Shown: positions 10,837 to 21,800 of the stretch, piece after piece
Numbering within the stretch: the first letter of the stretch is position 1
Layout of the letters: every line of letters starts with the position of its first letter
Assembly: GCA_001949185.1 (NCBI GenBank)
Contig: BDGG01000002.1
Location: forward strand, 4,516,448-4,580,447
Length of the DNA: 64,000 nucleotides
From: Ramazzottius varieornatus
Lineage: Eukaryota; Animalia; Tardigrada
Reading direction: 5' to 3'
Notes under the pieces: generated by a model
Told to the model about the DNA's origin: nothing
Database searches by the model: none
What the model saw: the letters and a program-made list of their open reading frames with translations, nothing else
Translations under genes and position numbers: made by a program

Positions 10837-11807
10837 TTACGTTGTCTTTGGCTGTTGTTGGAATCCAATGACGCCGCAAGCCAGGCGACCGCCAGCGCTT
10901 CCGGTCTTCTTGCTTTCTGGAGTGTTTCCTCGACCAAGATCATCGGCTTTCTCGTGGACAACGACGCTGCGTCCGATGATGCTGTTGTTTCCGGAGAGGG
11001 AAAGAACCATGTCCGTCAGATCGACCGTCACTTTTCCACTATCTACAAGGACAAAACGTTTGACTAGAAGATCAATCGAAATTTCAAAATTTGAGTCAGA
11101 AAGATAACACAGAAACCGCAACGAGAAAGAAAAGTTTTCTCCTTCACCACATATACTGTAACTTTCAAGATTGTAGTAACGTATAAACTTACCATCAGCT
11201 TCGACGTTGCCGAGATCGCCAACGTGACGGGTAGAGTCGTCCTTATCGCCGTGCGTCTTCTTCTCCGGGTTGTAGTGGTCTCCGGCGGAAATGCAGCCAT
11301 TGCTCAAGTCACCTGCAAGGAAAAAACCCAAACGTTCGAGCTGGAAACCAGGAAGTTTCTTCATATGTGAAAGGCTGAAAGCATCGACGTACCGAATTCG
11401 TGAACGTGGAAGCCATGTTTGCCTATGGAGGGGAAAAGCAAGTTCTACGCAACATTGTCAGTTTAGTAAGCAAAATCCTCGAGGAGGTTCAGAGTCCTGA
11501 GCTTCATACCACTACGAACCTGGCTTGAGTCCTGCCAAAAAATAACACGGGTCAGTTGCAGACGACAAGAAATGCGGCAGTGGTTCCATTGTTTAACGAT
11601 GGTTATGTACTCCGACGTACCTGTAATTTCTCCGGTGATCTTGACGGGAGAATTCATGCCGTCTTGGGCGAAACGGATAGTCCCTTTGACGTCGTTCTCG
11701 TTTCCAGACATGACAGCGATGGCTTTCATCTGGGCAGCGGAAGAGCGGTGCAGCAGAAGGAAGCCTCCCAGGCACAGAAAGACGGTTGCTGCTGTAAGAC
11801 GAGCCAT
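10837..11807 (-). CDS. Secreted Cu/Zn superoxide dismutase (SOD3-like), 5 exons, 184 aa
   Basis: Exons 11807-11621, 11531-11520, 11422-11393, 11312-11193 and 11042-10837 total 555 nt in frame. Signal peptide [24 protein letters not shown]. All ligand motifs are intact: [54 protein letters not shown]. Confidence 0.96.
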
Positions 11808-14380: not shown

Positions 14381-15434
14381 ACATTGGAATGTCCGTTGGT
14401 GGCAGCGGTTATATTAATTAAGTGCCTTCAAGTTCAAGTGGATATTGTTCCAGACGTGTTGAACAGACCGGGCACGTGTCGTCGGTTCTTGGAGCTTTGT
14501 CGTGGCTACTCCCGTGTTCAATTCCGCTCGCGTATACGTAGCCTTTCTCAAGACTTTGAAGACAAGCGAGTCTTTGGCGACGACGAGCGATCTCCGTCAT
14601 GTACTGCGCCTCCTTCTTCCGAGAACGAACTGATGTATGACTGGGGAGGTATTGTCTCAGTTCACTACATTCCCACCAAACGCAAGATGGGTGAAAACGG
14701 CCAGGTCGAAGGCAAAGATGAGGCTGAAGCCGGGTGGGATGACAAAGCGGAAGACCTTTCGAGCAACTGTTCGTTACAGGTTATTCCTGGAAACAAGCCT
14801 GGATGGGCTCCAAGTGTCGTGTTCGGTAGACTCAAGAACCCGACTGCTAATGTTGGCAATTAAGCTCGATAGTGTAGCAAGGACCGCAAGGACCGCCCAA
14901 AACAGACACGCTGCTAGGTCTTACAGTGTAAGACAAAATTAACCGTTAAAAATGTAATACTACAGCGGGAGATTATTTACGACTCGGCCAATGAGAATTC
15001 TATTTTGCTGCATGCGCAAATTTCACTGGCTTGATCCATCTGGTTCCATCCAGTACCTATTTTTAACGGTTTATTTTGTCGTACACTGTATATGGTGTTA
15101 GGCGAAGCTGAGCTTCGCATAACAGCTTCAGAAGCTGCTGTATTATTTTCAGTTGTGAAGCCGCCCTAGACGCCACAAACTGCCGAGAGTTGGTGATTAC
15201 GTTCTTCTGCAAGCAGGAACCTTGCGAGCAGCTATAGAGGCTCTGGAACCTAGCGCAGTGATACCAGAAGTTATCCATACATAGGAATACCGATGGCCTC
15301 GGAAGTACAAGTTCATGCTTGTTACGGAGTATGATCAACCAGTTATTCGTATAAGATCGCCGTTCTGTAGTTCTAAAGTAATAAATGCAGATGGAAGAGT
15401 ATGTAAAGCAGGAGTAATTTTGTGAGACTGTTTC

Positions 15435-18091
15435 TTATGCGCGACCCAAAATGCCGCAACTGATGGGTTGTCCCATTCGCATGCCTGGCGCCATCGTGGG
15501 TCTTTTAGACATTCTTTGGAATCGCCTGCGCATACCCTCGTCTCTCATCCGACCCGCGTAATTCGCGTCCACGGGCATGAGACGATCAGGTCGGATTATA
15601 GTCACTCCCTGGACTGCAGCAGTACTAGTATTATTGACCGTCTGGTAGGTGGTACCACTACCATCAGAGCCGCTGATATCGAGACCGTAGACTCCTGTAA
15701 CGATAAGCCAGCCTTTAGTGAAATTCCACACGCCGAGTGTAGTGCGATTTTACAAGAATGCACATATTACCATCCACGGGTTGTCCAGCAACAATTTGGC
15801 GCTTGTTGCGTCTGACACCATATACTGGTCGGATAGCCACGGTTCGTCCATACAGATACCTCGGGTTTCCGCAAGCAGACTCTTCGGGGATGTAAAAGTC
15901 AAAGTTTCCGCGTCCGTTTTCTAGGAAAAGAACCGTGTTTTCCATTCAGACTTTAGACCGAACGGAGCTACAGTAGCATTGACTGAGGTCTCGAAAAAAC
16001 TGCTAAACGTCGACACAGAAGTCAACACCTACCGTCAGTCACGAAGGTTCCGATGACGGCCCCGTTGTAGTCTCGTGCATCACGTCGGCTGGCGGCAGCG
16101 CTGAGAGGACCAGTCTGGCGCTTGTTGCGTCCACGGCGTCCATCTGTGAAAACAAGGAGCATCGTAGTACTGGATAAAGTCGGGGTCCGGGTCGAAATGA
16201 AACGCGCAGCTTCAGCTATGACGTCTTGCACTTGGGTCTCCGCAAGCTAGCGCACTGCATGCTTACAAAAACCTAGGTAACACTTACCGCTTCTAGGCAC
16301 CATTGCTTCCATCTCCACCGGTTCGTAATTGACATCGGGGAACCCTATGAAGCTTGTTGGTTTGAAATGCAGCGGGAGAAATTTTAGGCCAGTACTTCCT
16401 TAGAGCCCGAAACTTAGAATTGCGGAGACCCACAGACTCTTATCCTTCTCGTTTAACGCGCTGTATTTTCAATACGGACCATTAACTGTCAGTGGAAATT
16501 CCCAAGCCCGACGGGTGGATCTTACCTCGTTCTCGCGGTACGTAGTTGTCACCCAAGTACTGTGTGTATCCGGTCGTTACATTGCTTCGTGGGTTAACCA
16601 CTACCACATTGTCAGTCGGGTATCCCGAAACTGGAACGTAGTTGACGGGAACGTAGCCACCGTTATAGTAATTGGTGTTAGTGGTGGCATTGACTACTGT
16701 TTGCAAGGGCAAGAACTTGACGTTGCTTTCATCATTCTGGGTGTTGTTCTGATAGACCACGTGGTCGTTGTTACCAGTTCCCCGAACAGAAACTGGGTTC
16801 AGCTTGTTGTACACTCCATTGGGGTCGTTTCTGTAGTACGAAGTATCGTTACCACTGTAGTCGACGCCGGGAATGAAGAAGGCGACGTTACTGGGTAGAC
16901 CATTCTGATTGTACCCTTGACCAAAGGCTCGTGCTCCGCTGTAGTAAGTTTGGTTGGTGCCATCCTGGTTGACCACGACATAATTACTTCCGTTGGACAC
17001 AGGCTGCAGAACTGCGGTGTTGCCACCACGACCGTAGTTGCCGTACCCGTAGTTGCTCGGGGCGTAGTTGGTGTAGTCGGCTTGGTAGTTGGAGACTGCG
17101 ACCGGTACTGCGTTTTCGATAACGTATGCGGTGGCACCACTAGTACTACCAGTGTTAGTGTTCCCGTTGGGATTCGCAACGCCAATGATGGTACCGTTAG
17201 AGTCGACCAATGCGTGTCGGATGTAGTTGTCACCGGTAGCTTCCGTGTTGACTCCTCCCACGGGAATGTTGCGAAGTCGCATACCCTGACCCAGCTGCGA
17301 GCATCCGCCACTCATGTCACCGAACTGATGGAAGGTTAGGACGTAAGTCTCCGCTACAAAACGACATGCGATTAGCTGGAGAATGTGTATAGGTTCTTGA
17401 TATCCAAATAGAAATTTCAAGAAACGATGATTCAACGTGTCACCGGGTGGACCTATATTTTTCGGCTTTCCTTACCGGGAACAAGAGAACTGACGTTTCC
17501 AGACACCATATAGCCAGATCCGTAAGCACTAACTGGGTAGACAGTGACCACGATCGATCCAGAGCCGCGGTTCCTCATTCGGTCAGCATCACGGTTCCTC
17601 ATTCGGTCAGCATCACGGTTGCGCGATCGGTCAGCATCACGCTTTCCACGGCCACGGTAGTTGTCACGCGAGGTTCCATCGACCACCGCAGTGGCGGTCG
17701 CTGTCGGGACGGCATAGACCACTCCGTCGCTTCCTCGGACATACTGCACAGCTGTGGAACCGGTAGCTGTGGTTCCAGTAGATGTGGTACGTACACCAGT
17801 GTTGTCTGCATTCGTGTTCGTTACTACAACGGTGTCGACGGGGATTGCGGCGTCCTGGACCACGACTAAGACGGTGGTAGCGTCGATGCTGTACGGGGTG
17901 GTGACAGTCACGTTGTTAATTCGTGTGACCGGTGTGACGTAAGCGCCAGAACGCCTGGTTATAGGGGAAAGGAAGACGACTAGGGCCACTATAAGGATAA
18001 GAAGGGCTAAAGTAGAAAAGACTAGACCGTGCTGGCATTTGGTCGTGGTGCTCATTCCTGCGCTTCCGCTCGAATACGTATCACGAGCCAT
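15435..18091 (-). CDS. Type II membrane-anchored, catalytically dead Cu/Zn-SOD-fold protein with three large furin-site loop insertions (~673 aa, 6 exons)
   Basis: Exons 18091-17476, 17353-16526, 16344-16288, 16143-16033, 15920-15771 and 15694-15435 total 2022 nt, all GT-AG and phase 1. SOD motifs appear in order: GSIVVTV..YMVSGNVSSLVPAETYVLTFHQFGDMSGGCSQLG / GAVIGTFVTDENGRGNF / YLYGRTVAIR / GQPISCGILG*. Confidence 0.85.
17568..17639 (-). repeat. 24-bp coding tandem repeat x3 (DADR[S/M]RNR)
   Basis: CGGTTCCTCATTCGGTCAGCATCA repeated on the + strand, directly after the RGKR site in the protein. Confidence 0.85.
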
Positions 18092-18868
18092 GATGGCAAA
18101 TGGATAGGAATCCCTCCAAGAAAGTCAAGGTACAGGAAAAAATGTACCAATCAGCAGAAAATGGGGAATTTGTAAATGTCTACAGTAACATACAGCCCAT
18201 TCGGGTGGCACAGACAATCCAACGCGAAGAGCTTGAAGACTCCAACGTTTTTCCGTTGTCAAATGCCCCAGGCAAGCCTTACTGTTTGTCACCGTACCGT
18301 TGGGGATTCTGGTCTATTGTCTGACAGCGAAGCATATTACCCCCCAGGTATCGCCTGTGGCATTTCCTGAAGTCCCGTACCAAACACTAAAATATACGCA
18401 CGGCAGAGAGCTCAACGAGAAAGACTTGCGTGGTGTTTCTAGCCGACCTGACTTCAGAAGAGAAATCGGTCTATCCCAATTTCTGGTTTGCTTTAGTTTA
18501 CACAACTTGTAGAAGTGGAGGCTGGAAAAGATCGTGTTACTAATAGAGAGCTCGAAACTTCTTTTTCGCGAAGCTGATGCGTAAGTTAATAACAACTTCC
18601 ATTTGAAGATGGGAAAACTGCGAGCGGCTGGTTCTTCGCCCCGCAGCATACAATACCACAAGGCCTTTGGCAATTAACGCAGTCTTTGGCTAGGAGACTT
18701 CCTTACATTGGGACTTTCCAGAAGAAAGCCTTAAGTATTGAACGTCGTGGTTCGAAATTGCTGCCTTTACGCCTGCAACGTTTCGTGACCAAGAAAAAAT
18801 TCTTTTCCAGCAAAAGATGTAAGACGTTCGGTAAACTCCATAACCATATTTCGGCGGTGATGAAAATT

Positions 18869-21800
18869 TTAGTTTTTCATAACTTCATCAATCCACGCTT
18901 GATACTGGCCAAGATTAACAAACAAAGCCGGCATACCGCCTTGACCACATTGGATACCGGAGACAATAATACCAGCTAGCTGGGACGTGCCTCCCACAGA
19001 GCAGATCAGCGGTCCGCCACCATCCCCGTTACATATGGTTTGTCGTCCAGTGGCGCTACCACACATGAAGGACGTGGTTTGGAACTTAAAGCCGGGCCCT
19101 AGAGGCGAATTTCTTAGACGATAAGCGCATTCTTGATTGGGCCATATTCGCGTCGTTATTCGCTTCAGCCGTGATGAAAATGGGAAATCTGCAGCAAACA
19201 AACAATCAAGTATCTCTCTATGAGGAATATTCGAGGCTCTGTACGACGCACTTTGTCCAAGTTTGCCCCATCCGGAGGCCTGGCAGTTCATCCCATAGTA
19301 GTCGATCTGTCCAGGTCGACATACGAGGCAAATGTTACTCAGACTGATATCAGCCGGACGGTTCAATTTCAGCATAGCGACGTCGTTCTCGAGGGTCTTT
19401 GGATTGAAGCTGGAATGTATGTACAGGTTGAAGACCGAGTAGTCGCGAGGTCCCGGTATTTCCGTCGTCACGTTGAAGTCCCATTCTCCCAGCCGTACTG
19501 TGATGTCCATAGGACTTCGCCTGTTTGATGAAGAATAGTTAGGGTTTGCGATCCGCGCTCAGTTCAGTAATCGCATGGACTTACTTCGAGACACAATGGG
19601 CGGCAGTCAGGAGCCATATTGTATCGATCAAGACTGCTGAACAGAAATAGTTTCCGGAAGATCGGTCAAGCAGTGCCGCCTAACAGCAATAAATTTCTCG
19701 GTTTTCAGTCTGGATTGGATCCGAGCATAGCGAGAAACGTGGATAACAAACCTGCCAGCAGTTTTCTCCAACGTCAACGAAATCCGGGTCCGACACACCA
19801 GCTTCCGGAATGGGCATACCGTTAATGGCCGCCGAATATGCGCCACCATAAGCCGGAGCAGCTGAGCCCCTTCCCTTGACACCACATTGTCCATTGACCG
19901 AGTTCCTTGTGTAACAGCAACTCAGTTCTGGTGACGAGCAACCGTACAGCGACACTTCCATATTGTACATGGAGCAGTTCCTGGCCGCGCTGTTTGGCAC
20001 ACAGATACCTGGATGGTCTTGTATCACGCACTTGTTGGCCTGATCCAGTGTGAACGAAGACTCCCTGTCCAGCTCGTTCGTCGGAGTAAAACAGCATAGT
20101 TGGTCCATTCCACATCCTCCAACCCGAGTGCGGTAGCCCATCTTCACGCAGGACTGCACCATATTTCGGCTTATACAGGAAGCTGCTTCACCCCGACCTC
20201 CACACATCCCACCGGCTGGTTGAGATTGGATATTGCTGGATGACGCCTGGAAACCTCCACCACCAAGTCCACCTTGTAAGTTCCCTTGGTCAAGATGGCT
20301 GTTGCCGTTCATGTTGTTCTGGTTATTACTAATGAACAATGGCAAGACCGTCTTGATCAGTGAACCAATATCGAAACCCGACGTCATGGAATTCGATGGA
20401 GCAGCGGGTGCTGATTGTCCCGCCAGGGTTCCGATAACTGGAAGTGCAGTCTGAACGGCAGTTTGCACAGGATTCACAGCTTGAGCAGGAGACGGTTGCT
20501 GAATGTTCTGGGCGGAAATGGTGTTTGGTGACAGCAGGGAAGGCAGTTGCTGCATGTTGTTGGTGGCTAACGGAGGAGCGCGACCTTGAGCACTAGGCTG
20601 CTTTGCTTCGAAAGAGATGGCTAGCGGCTCTTCTTTGAGGGAAGAGACGTCAAGGTTAGCTGCAGCGGATGGGTCGGATGAATAGCAGCAGGACTCGGAA
20701 GACTCACATCCGCTAGGAGAGATCTGCATGCCGAGACCTGGACAGAGAGCGGTGAGGGAGGTGGCGACGCAGATACCGTCGAACCCACTGACGGTACACG
20801 CCCTTCGAGCTCGAGCCTCACCAGCCCGGTCTGACGCTGGCGCAGACAGCTCATCGAGCTCGGAACCTTCCATCATCATGTCATCGCCTAAACTTTCTCT
20901 TTTGGGTTTCTTTACGGCTTGCGTGATGGTGTTGACTAGATCGTCGGGAATTCTTGCATTTGGGCTACCTGCGGAGAAAAAGCAAAGTAACAATCGGACA
21001 TTATTAGGGAAGGCTTCACTTACGTGCGCAGCAAATCTGAGGCGAAGGGCAGTTTCCGGGTTCAATCTTCAGATTCATATTTTGACATACACCCTGCATG
21101 GAGGGTGGCATGCAGAATCCCCGCGACCCGTTACTAACATTGCAAGAAGATAGATTGGACGCGGCAGCTTGCAGGCTTCCTAACATTGCCGGTGAGATCT
21201 GCGAAGTAAGGGACGGTGGAAGCGTGTTGGAAGGAGTCGCCGTAACCTGAGGTCGTTGCTCGATGACGGGGGCTGGAGTGGTTATGGCAGCCGTCAGCAA
21301 CCCATCGATCAGACTGGTCGCAATGTTGGTGGGACTTTGTGCTTTAGGAGCGGTAAGGGTACTCAGGATCATACTTAGGACATTCGGAGGAATGTTGCCG
21401 GTAGTCTGCTGCATTTGAGACTGCATCACATTGCTCAAAGTGTTTTGAATGGGGTTGTTGGATTGAACGAAGGAACCGCCACCGACTCGGCTAAACTGAG
21501 CCAAGTTCTGAGCTGGGGTATTGTCCGCCATGGCTGTGGAAGGCTGAGAGGGTATAAAACCAGTAGGAAGTGCGTTCTGGTTACCCAGAAAATTTTGAAT
21601 GTTCTGCTGTTGGTTTTGGCTGTTCAGTTGACCAAGACTGTTGGGTTGTTGGTTCTGGGCGCCGAAAACGTTGGGTTGCGTCATCGATGACGACGCCATC
21701 TGGGGGGACTGGTTCGCCATCAGCCCATTCTGCATGCCGTCCAGCGAAGGCGGCTGTTGCAGACCACTCATGGCTTCTGGTGCTCTTCGATAACAGCAGA

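What the first reader, a model, noticed from the sequence alone, without database searches (positions are those of the whole stretch)
15799..17650. Each of the three inserted loops carries an R-x-K-R furin site
Seen: RGKR|DADR in loop I (17639-17650), RNKR|QTG in loop IV (16118-16129) and RNKR|QIV in loop VII (15799-15810). The two RNKRQ sites share a 16-nt identical stretch. Further basic pairs occur (SRRDAR, MRRRFQR, MSKR). Established: R-x-[K/R]-R is the furin/proprotein convertase consensus, and a new N-terminal Gln can cyclise to pyroglutamate. Inference: the barrel would be nicked into four chains held together by the beta-sheet and the conserved disulfide, exposing free sticky arms or releasing peptides. 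This would be a proteolytic maturation switch built into an antioxidant fold.
Basis: partly seen in the sequence, partly recalled or inferred. Interest (0 to 1): 0.85.

Follow-up and report, generated by a model that had tools for sequence, protein, structure and literature searches.

The report
Conserved convertase-type sites in tardigrade pseudo-SOD loops
A well-expressed tardigrade gene for a membrane-anchored, metal-less relative of Cu/Zn superoxide dismutase carries three canonical R-x-K-R convertase (furin-type) motifs, one in each enlarged loop; all three are kept in the only known relative, but neither cleavage nor the side of the membrane they face is shown.

Summary
RGKR (17650-17639), RNKR (16129-16118) and RNKR (15810-15799) lie on the minus strand inside exons 1, 3 and 4 of a five-exon gene. 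RNA contigs from four studies give its splice joints. The product is identical to NCBI's 'hypothetical protein RvY_04937' of Ramazzottius varieornatus (654 aa).

- Enrichment: strict R-x-K-R occurs 3 times against 0.05-0.25 expected (P about 0.001 or less, even when only 20-residue blocks are shuffled). The broader R-x-[KR]-R is not enriched once local Arg-richness is kept.
- Conservation: the only homologue found among 1.84 billion representatives is a 609-aa transcript-derived protein from an unnamed second organism, about 60% identical. It keeps all three sites (RGKR, RNKR, R[D/N]KR), each Gln after the second and third, and both SOD-type cysteines. Sequence next to the first two sites diverges with indels.
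- Enzymes: the genome has six loci with a subtilisin domain followed by a P domain.

Open points: the flank charges of the single hydrophobic segment (+1 N, +3 C) favour a cytosolic C-terminal domain. Pfam does not see Sod_Cu. The AlphaFold model failed. Cleavage is untested.

Verdict: plausible conserved convertase sites (about 0.45). The 'four-chain nicked barrel' remains inference. The scan noted this same stretch before, not other DNA.

The parts
15435..18091 (-). Whole coding region of the gene (RvY_04937, 654 aa). Exons: 18091-17476, 17353-16526, 16143-16033, 15920-15771, 15694-15435. All four introns are phase 1 with GT..AG ends.
   Evidence: Splice joints in RNA contigs of 4 runs from 4 studies. 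The translation of these exons is identical to P0009 = NCBI RvY_04937.
17957..18028 (-). Single hydrophobic segment (aa 22-45), either a signal anchor or a long signal peptide. Flank charges are N +1 and C +3.
   Evidence: Kyte-Doolittle best 19-mer scores 3.16, next best 1.65. Flank charges are the same in both species.
17639..17650 (-). Site 1: R-G-K-R (aa 148-151), with P6 also Arg and P1' Asp. It lies in the insert just before the segment that aligns to SOD loop I (RGSGS against KGxGP).
   Evidence: It is conserved as GRGKR in P0001 and P0005-P0008 and is followed by a 16-residue indel.
17568..17641 (-). Three tandem 24-nt units coding R-D-A-D-R-[S/M]-R-N. They start at the P1 Arg of site 1 and are absent from the orthologue.
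   Evidence: Exact repeats at mRNA offsets 450, 474 and 498. There is a gap in the alignment. Short-read contigs break there.
16118..16129 (-). Site 2: R-N-K-R (aa 487-490), with P6 and P7 Arg and P1' Gln. It is 14 nt inside exon 3, at the C-terminal end of the roughly 260-residue Tyr/Asn/Gly/Val-rich insert in the Zn-loop position (loop IV).
   Evidence: It is conserved as RRRRNKRQ in the orthologue and is preceded by a 22-residue indel.
15799..15810 (-). Site 3: R-N-K-R (aa 556-559), with P5 Arg and P1' Gln. It begins 7 residues after the conserved GRTVAIRP segment (SOD strand 7), at the start of the loop VII insert.
   Evidence: It is conserved as R-[D/N]-K-R-Q in P0001 and P0005-P0008.
17301..17303 (-). 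Cys223 in FHQFGD-x3-GC, which corresponds to the first Cys of the SOD intrasubunit disulfide.
   Evidence: Invariant in A1. It aligns with the Cys of FGD-x3-GC in solved Cu/Zn SODs.
15456..15458 (-). Cys648 in P-I-S-C-G-I-L-G, which corresponds to the second Cys of the SOD disulfide.
   Evidence: It aligns with LACGVIG of the neighbouring true SOD.
10843..11807 (-). Context: the neighbouring four-exon true Cu/Zn SOD with a signal peptide. It is on the same strand and is the likely parent by tandem duplication.
   Evidence: PF00080 hits at window ~10867-11046 and ~11170-11316. Motifs HVHEFG, HVGDLGN and LACGVIG are present. Two phase-1 introns lie at equivalent positions.

Best explanation
The three R-x-K-R motifs are functional recognition sites for furin-type proprotein convertases. 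The precursor is inserted with its N-terminus in the cytosol, an orientation inherited from the signal peptide of the neighbouring secreted SOD. Its SOD-derived domain then passes through the Golgi, where a convertase cuts after Arg151, Arg490 and/or Arg559. Each cut opens one enlarged loop and turns a closed loop into free ends. It would leave new N-termini D-A-D-R..., Q-T-G... and Q-I-V..., the last two able to cyclise to pyroglutamate. The pieces could stay together through the sheet and the Cys223-Cys648 bridge. Shown: the motifs, their expression, their enrichment, their conservation in one orthologue, and convertase genes in the genome. Inferred: the topology, loop exposure, cleavage itself and what follows it.
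For: 1) Motifs verified and inside RNA-supported exons. 2) Strict R-x-K-R: 3 observed against 0.05-0.25 expected, P about 0.001 or less even with 20-residue block shuffles, in both species. Three of only 7 Lys are at P2. 3) All nine constrained residues, plus Gln at P1' of sites 2 and 3, are invariant in the orthologue cluster. Only 28 of 53 Arg are conserved overall. Flanks of sites 1 and 2 are 35-48% identical with many gaps. P3 varies (N/D) among P0001 variants while R, K and R stay fixed. 4) Extra upstream Arg at P5-P7, and P1' of D/Q/Q, fit the established rules for furin substrates (established knowledge). 5) Six loci carry Peptidase_S8 followed by a P domain. 6) The neighbouring parent-like SOD has a signal peptide whose c-region (HRSSAA) resembles RRSGA after the hydrophobic segment here. 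7) Furin processing of an SOD-family protein (SOD3 tail; PMC12774472) and of N-terminally anchored ecdysozoan matrix precursors (BLI-4 and collagens; PMC10538796) are known precedents.
Against: No cleavage data of any kind. There is only one orthologue, so conservation has odds of roughly 0.014 by chance given the Arg and Lys retention rates; that is suggestive, not decisive. Flank charges of +1 (N) and +3 (C), and a long, very hydrophobic segment, favour N-out/C-cytosolic by the classic charge-difference rule. That orientation would make convertase access impossible. R-x-[KR]-R is not enriched in this protein once local Arg-richness is preserved (P 0.2-0.26). Exposure of the sites could not be checked (AlphaFold pLDDT 26.5). 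The orthologue has Asp at P3 of site 3, which is less favourable.
Confidence: 0.45

Rival explanations
1. The motifs are conserved but not cleaved. They would be parts of Arg/Gly-rich basic patches with a binding role, for polyanions such as nucleic acids, glycosaminoglycans, chitin-associated matrix or acidic lipids, or sorting or retention signals (R-x-R type). This could be on a cytosolic C-terminal domain tethered to a membrane by an N-out anchor.
For: Flank charges are N +1 and C +3 in both species, with a 19-24-residue very hydrophobic segment. That is the pattern of N-out/C-in anchors (established charge-difference rule). The motifs sit in RG-rich contexts (YRGRGKR and GRRGRNKR; the orthologue also has GRGRGR upstream) next to a Tyr/Gly/Asn-rich region containing GYG and RGG. 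The broader basic motif is not enriched beyond local Arg-richness.
Against: A binding patch would tolerate Arg/Lys exchange, yet Lys is fixed at P2 in all three sites in a Lys-poor protein, and Gln is fixed at P1' of two of them. The gene looks derived from a secreted SOD. The SOD disulfide cysteines and 7 aligned N-x-S/T sequons are kept. A Thr/Val-rich stalk follows the anchor.
Confidence: 0.3
2. The motifs are by-products of Arg-rich, fast-evolving loops, shared by two fairly close species through common descent and with no function of their own. The 16-nt identity would reflect a small duplication or conversion event, or chance.
For: There is only one orthologue cluster, about 60% identical. 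R-x-[KR]-R is at expectation under block shuffling. A repeat expansion of Arg-rich units sits right at site 1. The choice of the strict motif is post hoc.
Against: Strict R-x-K-R has P about 0.001 or less under the most conservative shuffle, in both species. All 9 constrained residues are kept, although 47% of Arg elsewhere changed and flanks are 35-48% identical with indels. Three separate loops each carry exactly one site.
Confidence: 0.15

Closest known systems
Mammalian extracellular SOD (SOD3), whose C-terminal heparin-binding domain is removed at a furin site
   Same: It is a Cu/Zn-SOD-family protein of the secretory pathway whose behaviour in the matrix is set by furin-type cleavage at a polybasic site (PMC12774472).
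   Different: SOD3 is an active enzyme with one site in a C-terminal tail outside the barrel. Here the protein has lost the metal ligands, has an N-terminal membrane segment, and carries three sites inside barrel loops. Cleavage here is not demonstrated.
C. elegans cuticle collagens and MACIT collagens cleaved by BLI-4/furin
   Same: They are ecdysozoan, N-terminally membrane-anchored precursors of repetitive, structural-looking proteins with a conserved consensus furin site after the anchor. Cleavage promotes secretion and assembly (PMC10538796).
   Different: Those have one site that frees the ectodomain from the anchor. Here site 1 lies after the putative first strand, and two more sites lie inside the fold, so cleavage would nick the domain rather than simply release it. 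There is no collagen sequence.
Metal-less SOD derivatives: oyster dominin/cavortin, Cu-less CSRP of arthropods and tardigrades, CCS domain II
   Same: They are SOD-derived folds that lost Cu and/or Zn sites and took on non-enzymatic, mostly extracellular roles (review PMC13017621).
   Different: The review was searched for 'furin' and 'proteoly' and has no occurrence of either, so it describes no convertase sites. It also does not describe loop inserts of hundreds of residues or a membrane anchor. Those proteins are still recognised as SOD-like by sequence, whereas this one fails Pfam Sod_Cu.
Ectodysplasin-type type II membrane proteins with overlapping R-x-R-R / R-N-K-R furin sites (recalled from memory, not tested here)
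   Same: They have a type II anchor, a stalk and overlapping polybasic furin sites. The orthologue's RRRRNKR resembles that arrangement.
   Different: The fold (TNF) is unrelated, and a single cleavage region releases a soluble ligand.

Membership tests
Furin/proprotein-convertase substrate site | Arg at P1 and P4 with a basic residue at P2 (R-x-K/R-R) | tested here: met
   RGKR, RNKR and RNKR. The orthologue has RGKR, RNKR and R[D/N]KR.
Furin/proprotein-convertase substrate site | P1' is not an aliphatic hydrophobic residue; extra basic residues at P5-P7 help (established rules) | tested here: met
   P1' is D, Q and Q. Site 1 has P6 Arg, site 2 has P6 and P7 Arg, and site 3 has P5 Arg.
Furin/proprotein-convertase substrate site | The site faces the lumen of the secretory pathway or the outside of the cell | tested here: inconclusive
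   There is one N-terminal hydrophobic segment. Flank charges of N +1 and C +3 argue for a cytosolic C-terminal domain. Resemblance to the neighbouring SOD's signal peptide argues for a lumenal one. No topology predictor was available.
Furin/proprotein-convertase substrate site | The site lies in an exposed, flexible segment | tested here: inconclusive
   Indels of 16, 22 and 1 residues lie directly beside the sites, which suggests loops. The AlphaFold model was unusable (pLDDT 26.5).
Furin/proprotein-convertase substrate site | A convertase is present in the organism | tested here: met
   Six loci carry Peptidase_S8 followed by P_proprotein in the correct order.
Furin/proprotein-convertase substrate site | Cleavage is observed | not testable with these tools
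   No proteomic or biochemical data are held. The identifier RvY_04937 occurs in no held paper.
Cu/Zn superoxide dismutase (Pfam Sod_Cu, PF00080) | Match to the family model above the curated cut-off | tested here: not met
   There is no Pfam hit at E up to 10 for the five exon pieces, P0009 or P0001. A six-frame PF00080 scan of the genome misses this locus but finds the neighbour.
Cu/Zn superoxide dismutase (Pfam Sod_Cu, PF00080) | Four His ligands for Cu, and three His plus one Asp for Zn | tested here: not met
   There are only 4 His in 654 residues (21, 214, 252, 403). FHQFGD keeps one of the H-x-H pair. The Zn-site region reads RRDARDY.
Cu/Zn superoxide dismutase (Pfam Sod_Cu, PF00080) | Conserved disulfide pair (FGD-x3-GC ... 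CG[VI][IL]G) | tested here: met
   Cys223 and Cys648 sit in those motifs and are invariant in both species.
Cu/Zn superoxide dismutase (Pfam Sod_Cu, PF00080) | Eight-stranded Greek-key barrel | tested here: inconclusive
   The profile against PDB sequences gives Cu/Zn SODs as all five best hits in one register, but at E about 0.1. The best structural neighbour of the ESM Atlas's own low-confidence model is a Sod_Cu cluster (TM 0.62 by that row). The AlphaFold model failed.
Cu/Zn superoxide dismutase (Pfam Sod_Cu, PF00080) | Descent from an SOD gene (gene structure and position) | tested here: met
   A true SOD lies about 3.6 kb downstream on the same strand. Two phase-1 introns are at equivalent places: after strand 3, within one residue, and in the strand 5/6 turn.

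The most novel reading that the evidence does not exclude
A beta-barrel domain is cut on purpose in three of its loops by convertases. The single-chain, membrane-tethered precursor would become a four-chain 'nicked barrel' held by its sheet and one disulfide. Its giant Tyr/Asn/Gly/Val-rich loops would become free arms, two with pyroglutamate N-termini, that can then assemble or adhere outside the cell. This would be a maturation mechanism built on a dead antioxidant fold and restricted to a few tardigrades.
Probability: 0.2. Interest if true: 0.75.

Novelty: new variant of a known kind. Interest (0 to 1): 0.5.

Why it matters
If the sites are cut, this would be an unusual use of proprotein convertases. 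They would open several loops inside one folded domain instead of removing a propeptide or shedding an ectodomain, and the domain is an enzyme fold that has lost its chemistry. It would also give a concrete, testable handle on a lineage-restricted, well-transcribed tardigrade protein of unknown function. The predicted neo-N-termini, R-to-A mutants and reducing versus non-reducing gels are all direct tests. If the C-terminal domain proves cytosolic, the conserved R-x-K-R-Q motifs still mark functional elements of another kind.

Tried and rejected
- My first exon-3 acceptor, guessed from ORFs at 16224, was wrong. RNA contigs place it at 16143. The RNKR site is unaffected.
- Pfam on the five exon pieces and on P0009 and P0001 gave nothing.
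- A six-frame Sod_Cu scan of the genome misses this locus.
- BLASTP of P0009 against the neighbour SOD's open frames gave only motif-sized matches, E 0.17-1.5.
- Own-genome searches with exons 3 and 5 found only the gene itself, so there is no paralogue with these loops.
- An exhaustive HMMER search with exon 2 found one cluster only.
- Word-indexed searches with P0001, with P0009 residues 480-654 and with P0002 found no further relatives.
- A metagenome scan with alignment A1 found none.
- AlphaFold with the 6-row alignment gave pLDDT 26.5, so no fold search was run on it.
- The ESM Atlas feature search had no usable hit.
The organism and the nucleotide sequence of P0001 could therefore not be obtained, and no codon-level test was possible.
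- The identifier is absent from the held papers and from two supplements.
- I considered a peptide-hormone-like release of the segment between RNKR and the RR at 501-502. I rejected it because that segment is poorly conserved beyond its first three residues.
- I handed no self-joined spliced model to any search tool. Exons were searched by reference, and the full-length searches used the database's own records P0009 and P0001. The join was made only inside local scripts, to check frame, identity to P0009 and internal repeats.
Full report
**What is there**

The finding lies in a minus-strand gene of a eukaryotic genome of 55.84 Mb in 200 contigs. Six-frame reading and splice-site inspection gave a five-exon model.

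RNA-derived contigs from four runs of four different studies were laid on window 15300-18200. They show four joints: 17353/17476, 16143/16526, 15920/16033 and 15693/15770 (the last fits equally one base further right). All have GT..AG ends on the minus strand. This corrected one of my guesses: the exon-3 acceptor is at 16143, not 16224.

The exons are 18091-17476, 17353-16526, 16143-16033, 15920-15771 and 15694-15435, and every intron is in phase 1. Their translation (654 aa) is identical to a database record, P0009. NCBI names it 'hypothetical protein RvY_04937 [Ramazzottius varieornatus]'.

I gave no self-joined model to any search tool. Exons were searched by reference, and full-length searches used the database records P0009 and P0001.

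**The observation**

- RGKR is at 17650-17639 (aa 148-151).
- RNKR is at 16129-16118 (aa 487-490).
- RNKR is at 15810-15799 (aa 556-559).

All three are exactly as described and inside the mRNA.

The two RNKRQ sites share the 16-nt string GACGCAACAAGCGCCA. It is the only exact repeat of 14 nt or more in the mRNA apart from a 24-nt tandem repeat. Given the same peptide, four identical codons have a probability of about 0.02 with this gene's own codon usage. CGC is not the commonest Arg codon here (11 of 54, four of them in these two motifs). The identity is therefore mildly more than the shared peptide explains. A small copying event, or chance, remains possible.

**Is it more than chance?**

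- The protein has 54 Arg but only 7 Lys. Three Lys sit at P2 of these motifs and a fourth is in MSKR.
- Strict R-x-K-R occurs 3 times against 0.046 expected by whole-protein shuffling (0 of 20000).
- With shuffling confined to 20-, 30- or 50-residue blocks, which keeps the local Arg-richness, the expectation is 0.12-0.25 (P 0.0011-0.0001).
- The broader consensus R-x-[KR]-R is not enriched in this protein under block shuffling (3 against 1.6-1.8; P 0.2-0.26).
- In the orthologue the broader consensus is enriched (4 against 0.7-1.0; P about 0.006-0.012).

The signal is real, but it depends on Lys at P2, and that motif choice was made after seeing the data.

**Relatives and conservation**

An exhaustive HMMER search of 1.84 billion representatives with exon 2 found one protein, P0001 (609 aa, E 3.6e-77). 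It comes from transcript-sized contigs of public runs, and short genomic fragments occur in its 90% cluster.

No other relative was found:

- word-indexed searches with P0001, with P0009 residues 480-654 and with P0002;
- own-genome searches with exons 3 and 5;
- a metagenome scan with the alignment.

P0009 and P0001 are 61% identical over aligned positions. All three sites are kept: GRGKR, RNKRQ and R-[D/N]-K-R-Q. P3 varies among P0001-cluster variants while R, K and R stay fixed. Gln after sites 2 and 3 is invariant.

Elsewhere only 28 of 53 Arg are conserved. The 20-60 residues around sites 1 and 2 are 33-48% identical, with a 16-residue indel right after site 1 and a 22-residue indel right before site 2. 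Site 3 lies in a better-conserved stretch (62-70%).

Given these retention rates, keeping all nine constrained residues has a chance probability of roughly 0.014.

- RR501-502 is kept, but it aligns with the SOD Zn-site segment.
- MRRRFQR becomes MRARFER.
- MSKR becomes MTNK.

**Is it an SOD barrel?**

By sequence models, no. Pfam reports nothing for the exon pieces or the full-length proteins at E up to 10. A six-frame Sod_Cu scan of the genome finds the neighbouring gene but not this one.

Evidence of descent from an SOD is nevertheless reasonable.

- A true, signal-peptide-bearing Cu/Zn SOD lies on the same strand at 11807-10843.
- Two phase-1 introns fall at equivalent places: after strand 3, within one residue, and in the strand 5/6 turn.
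- The motifs FHQFGD-x3-GC, GRTVAIRP and PISCGILG match SOD strand 4, strand 7 and strand 8.
- A profile of the two species against PDB sequences returns Cu/Zn SODs as all five best hits in one register, at E about 0.1.
- The best structural neighbour of the ESM Atlas's own low-confidence model is a Sod_Cu cluster (TM 0.62 by that row).

My AlphaFold run with the 6-row alignment failed (pLDDT 26.5), so I ran no fold search.

The protein has only four His, and at most one of them occupies a Cu-ligand position. It is not expected to be an active SOD.

- site 1 lies in an insert just before the segment aligned to loop I;
- site 2 lies at the end of the roughly 260-residue insert in the Zn-loop region of loop IV;
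- site 3 begins seven residues after strand 7, at the start of the loop VII insert.

**Could a convertase reach them?**

The genome has six loci with a subtilisin (S8) domain followed by a P domain in the right order, so the enzymes exist. The open question is topology.

There is one hydrophobic segment (aa 22-45). Its flanks carry +1 on the N side and +3 on the C side in both species. By the classic charge-difference rule this predicts an N-out, C-cytosolic anchor, and that would exclude convertase cleavage.

Several observations point the other way.

- The neighbouring parent-like SOD begins with a signal peptide. Its c-region (HRSSAA) resembles the RRSGA that follows the hydrophobic segment here, which suggests an inherited N-in orientation.
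- A Thr/Val-rich stalk follows the anchor.
- The two SOD cysteines and seven aligned N-x-S/T sequons are conserved.

I could not resolve this with the tools available. I put a lumenal or extracellular C-terminal domain at about 0.65.

**Mechanism and odds**

Best reading (0.45): these are functional convertase sites, and at least some are cut in the secretory pathway. Cutting would open the enlarged loops. The fragments would be 1-151, 152-490, 491-559 and 560-654, with Cys223-Cys648 linking the second and fourth.

The sites fit the established substrate rules:

- Arg at P4 and P1, and Lys at P2;
- added Arg at P5-P7;
- P1' of Asp, Gln and Gln.

It is entirely inferred that the pieces stay together as a nicked barrel and that this frees 'arms'.

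Rivals:

- conserved basic or RG-rich patches with a binding or sorting role, possibly on a cytosolic domain (0.30);
- by-products of Arg-rich loops shared by descent (0.15).

**Comparison with what is known**

- Furin processing of an SOD-family protein is known for mammalian SOD3, but there it removes a C-terminal heparin-binding tail (PMC12774472).
- N-terminally anchored ecdysozoan matrix precursors with consensus furin sites are known (BLI-4 and cuticle collagens; PMC10538796). Those have one releasing site.
- Metal-less SOD derivatives are known: dominin, Cu-less CSRPs including those of tardigrades, and CCS domain II (PMC13017621). That review contains no occurrence of 'furin' or 'proteoly'.

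Three conserved convertase-type sites inside the loops of one SOD-derived domain would be a new variant of known kinds, if cleavage is real.

**Verdict**

- Cleavage, topology and fold are unproven.
- The scan had already noted this same stretch under other headings (pseudo-SOD, shared introns, Tyr/Asn-rich insert), not on other DNA.

Noticed in passing
window 17568-17641 (minus): Three tandem 24-nt units code R-D-A-D-R-[S/M]-R-N and start at the P1 Arg of RGKR. They are absent from the orthologue, and short-read RNA contigs break there.
   Followed up: partly
window 16162-16536: Low-depth contigs (depth 2-7 against 140-200 for the exons) lie inside intron 2. They are unspliced pre-mRNA or DNA carry-over, and no alternative joint was reported.
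   Followed up: no
window 18869-19510 (minus): A trypsin-like open frame has GDGGGP where GDSGGP is expected, so it is probably a catalytically dead serine-protease homologue next to the pseudo-SOD.
   Followed up: no
window 10843-11807 (minus): A four-exon true Cu/Zn SOD with a signal peptide. All three of its introns are phase 1, two of them at positions equivalent to introns 1 and 3 of the pseudo-SOD. It has one extra intron inside HEFG|D that the pseudo-SOD lacks.
   Followed up: partly
G000: C3:2.166 Mb, C4:0.570 Mb, C4:2.884 Mb, C16:1.111 Mb, C3:1.060 Mb, C1:9.313 Mb: Six loci carry Peptidase_S8 followed by a P_proprotein domain. This is the genome's proprotein-convertase complement as seen in six frames.
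   Followed up: partly
window 15799-15814 and 16118-16133 (minus): The 16-nt identity at the two RNKRQ sites uses CGC for all four Arg, although CGC is a minority Arg codon in this gene. A micro-duplication or conversion between the sites is possible.
   Followed up: partly
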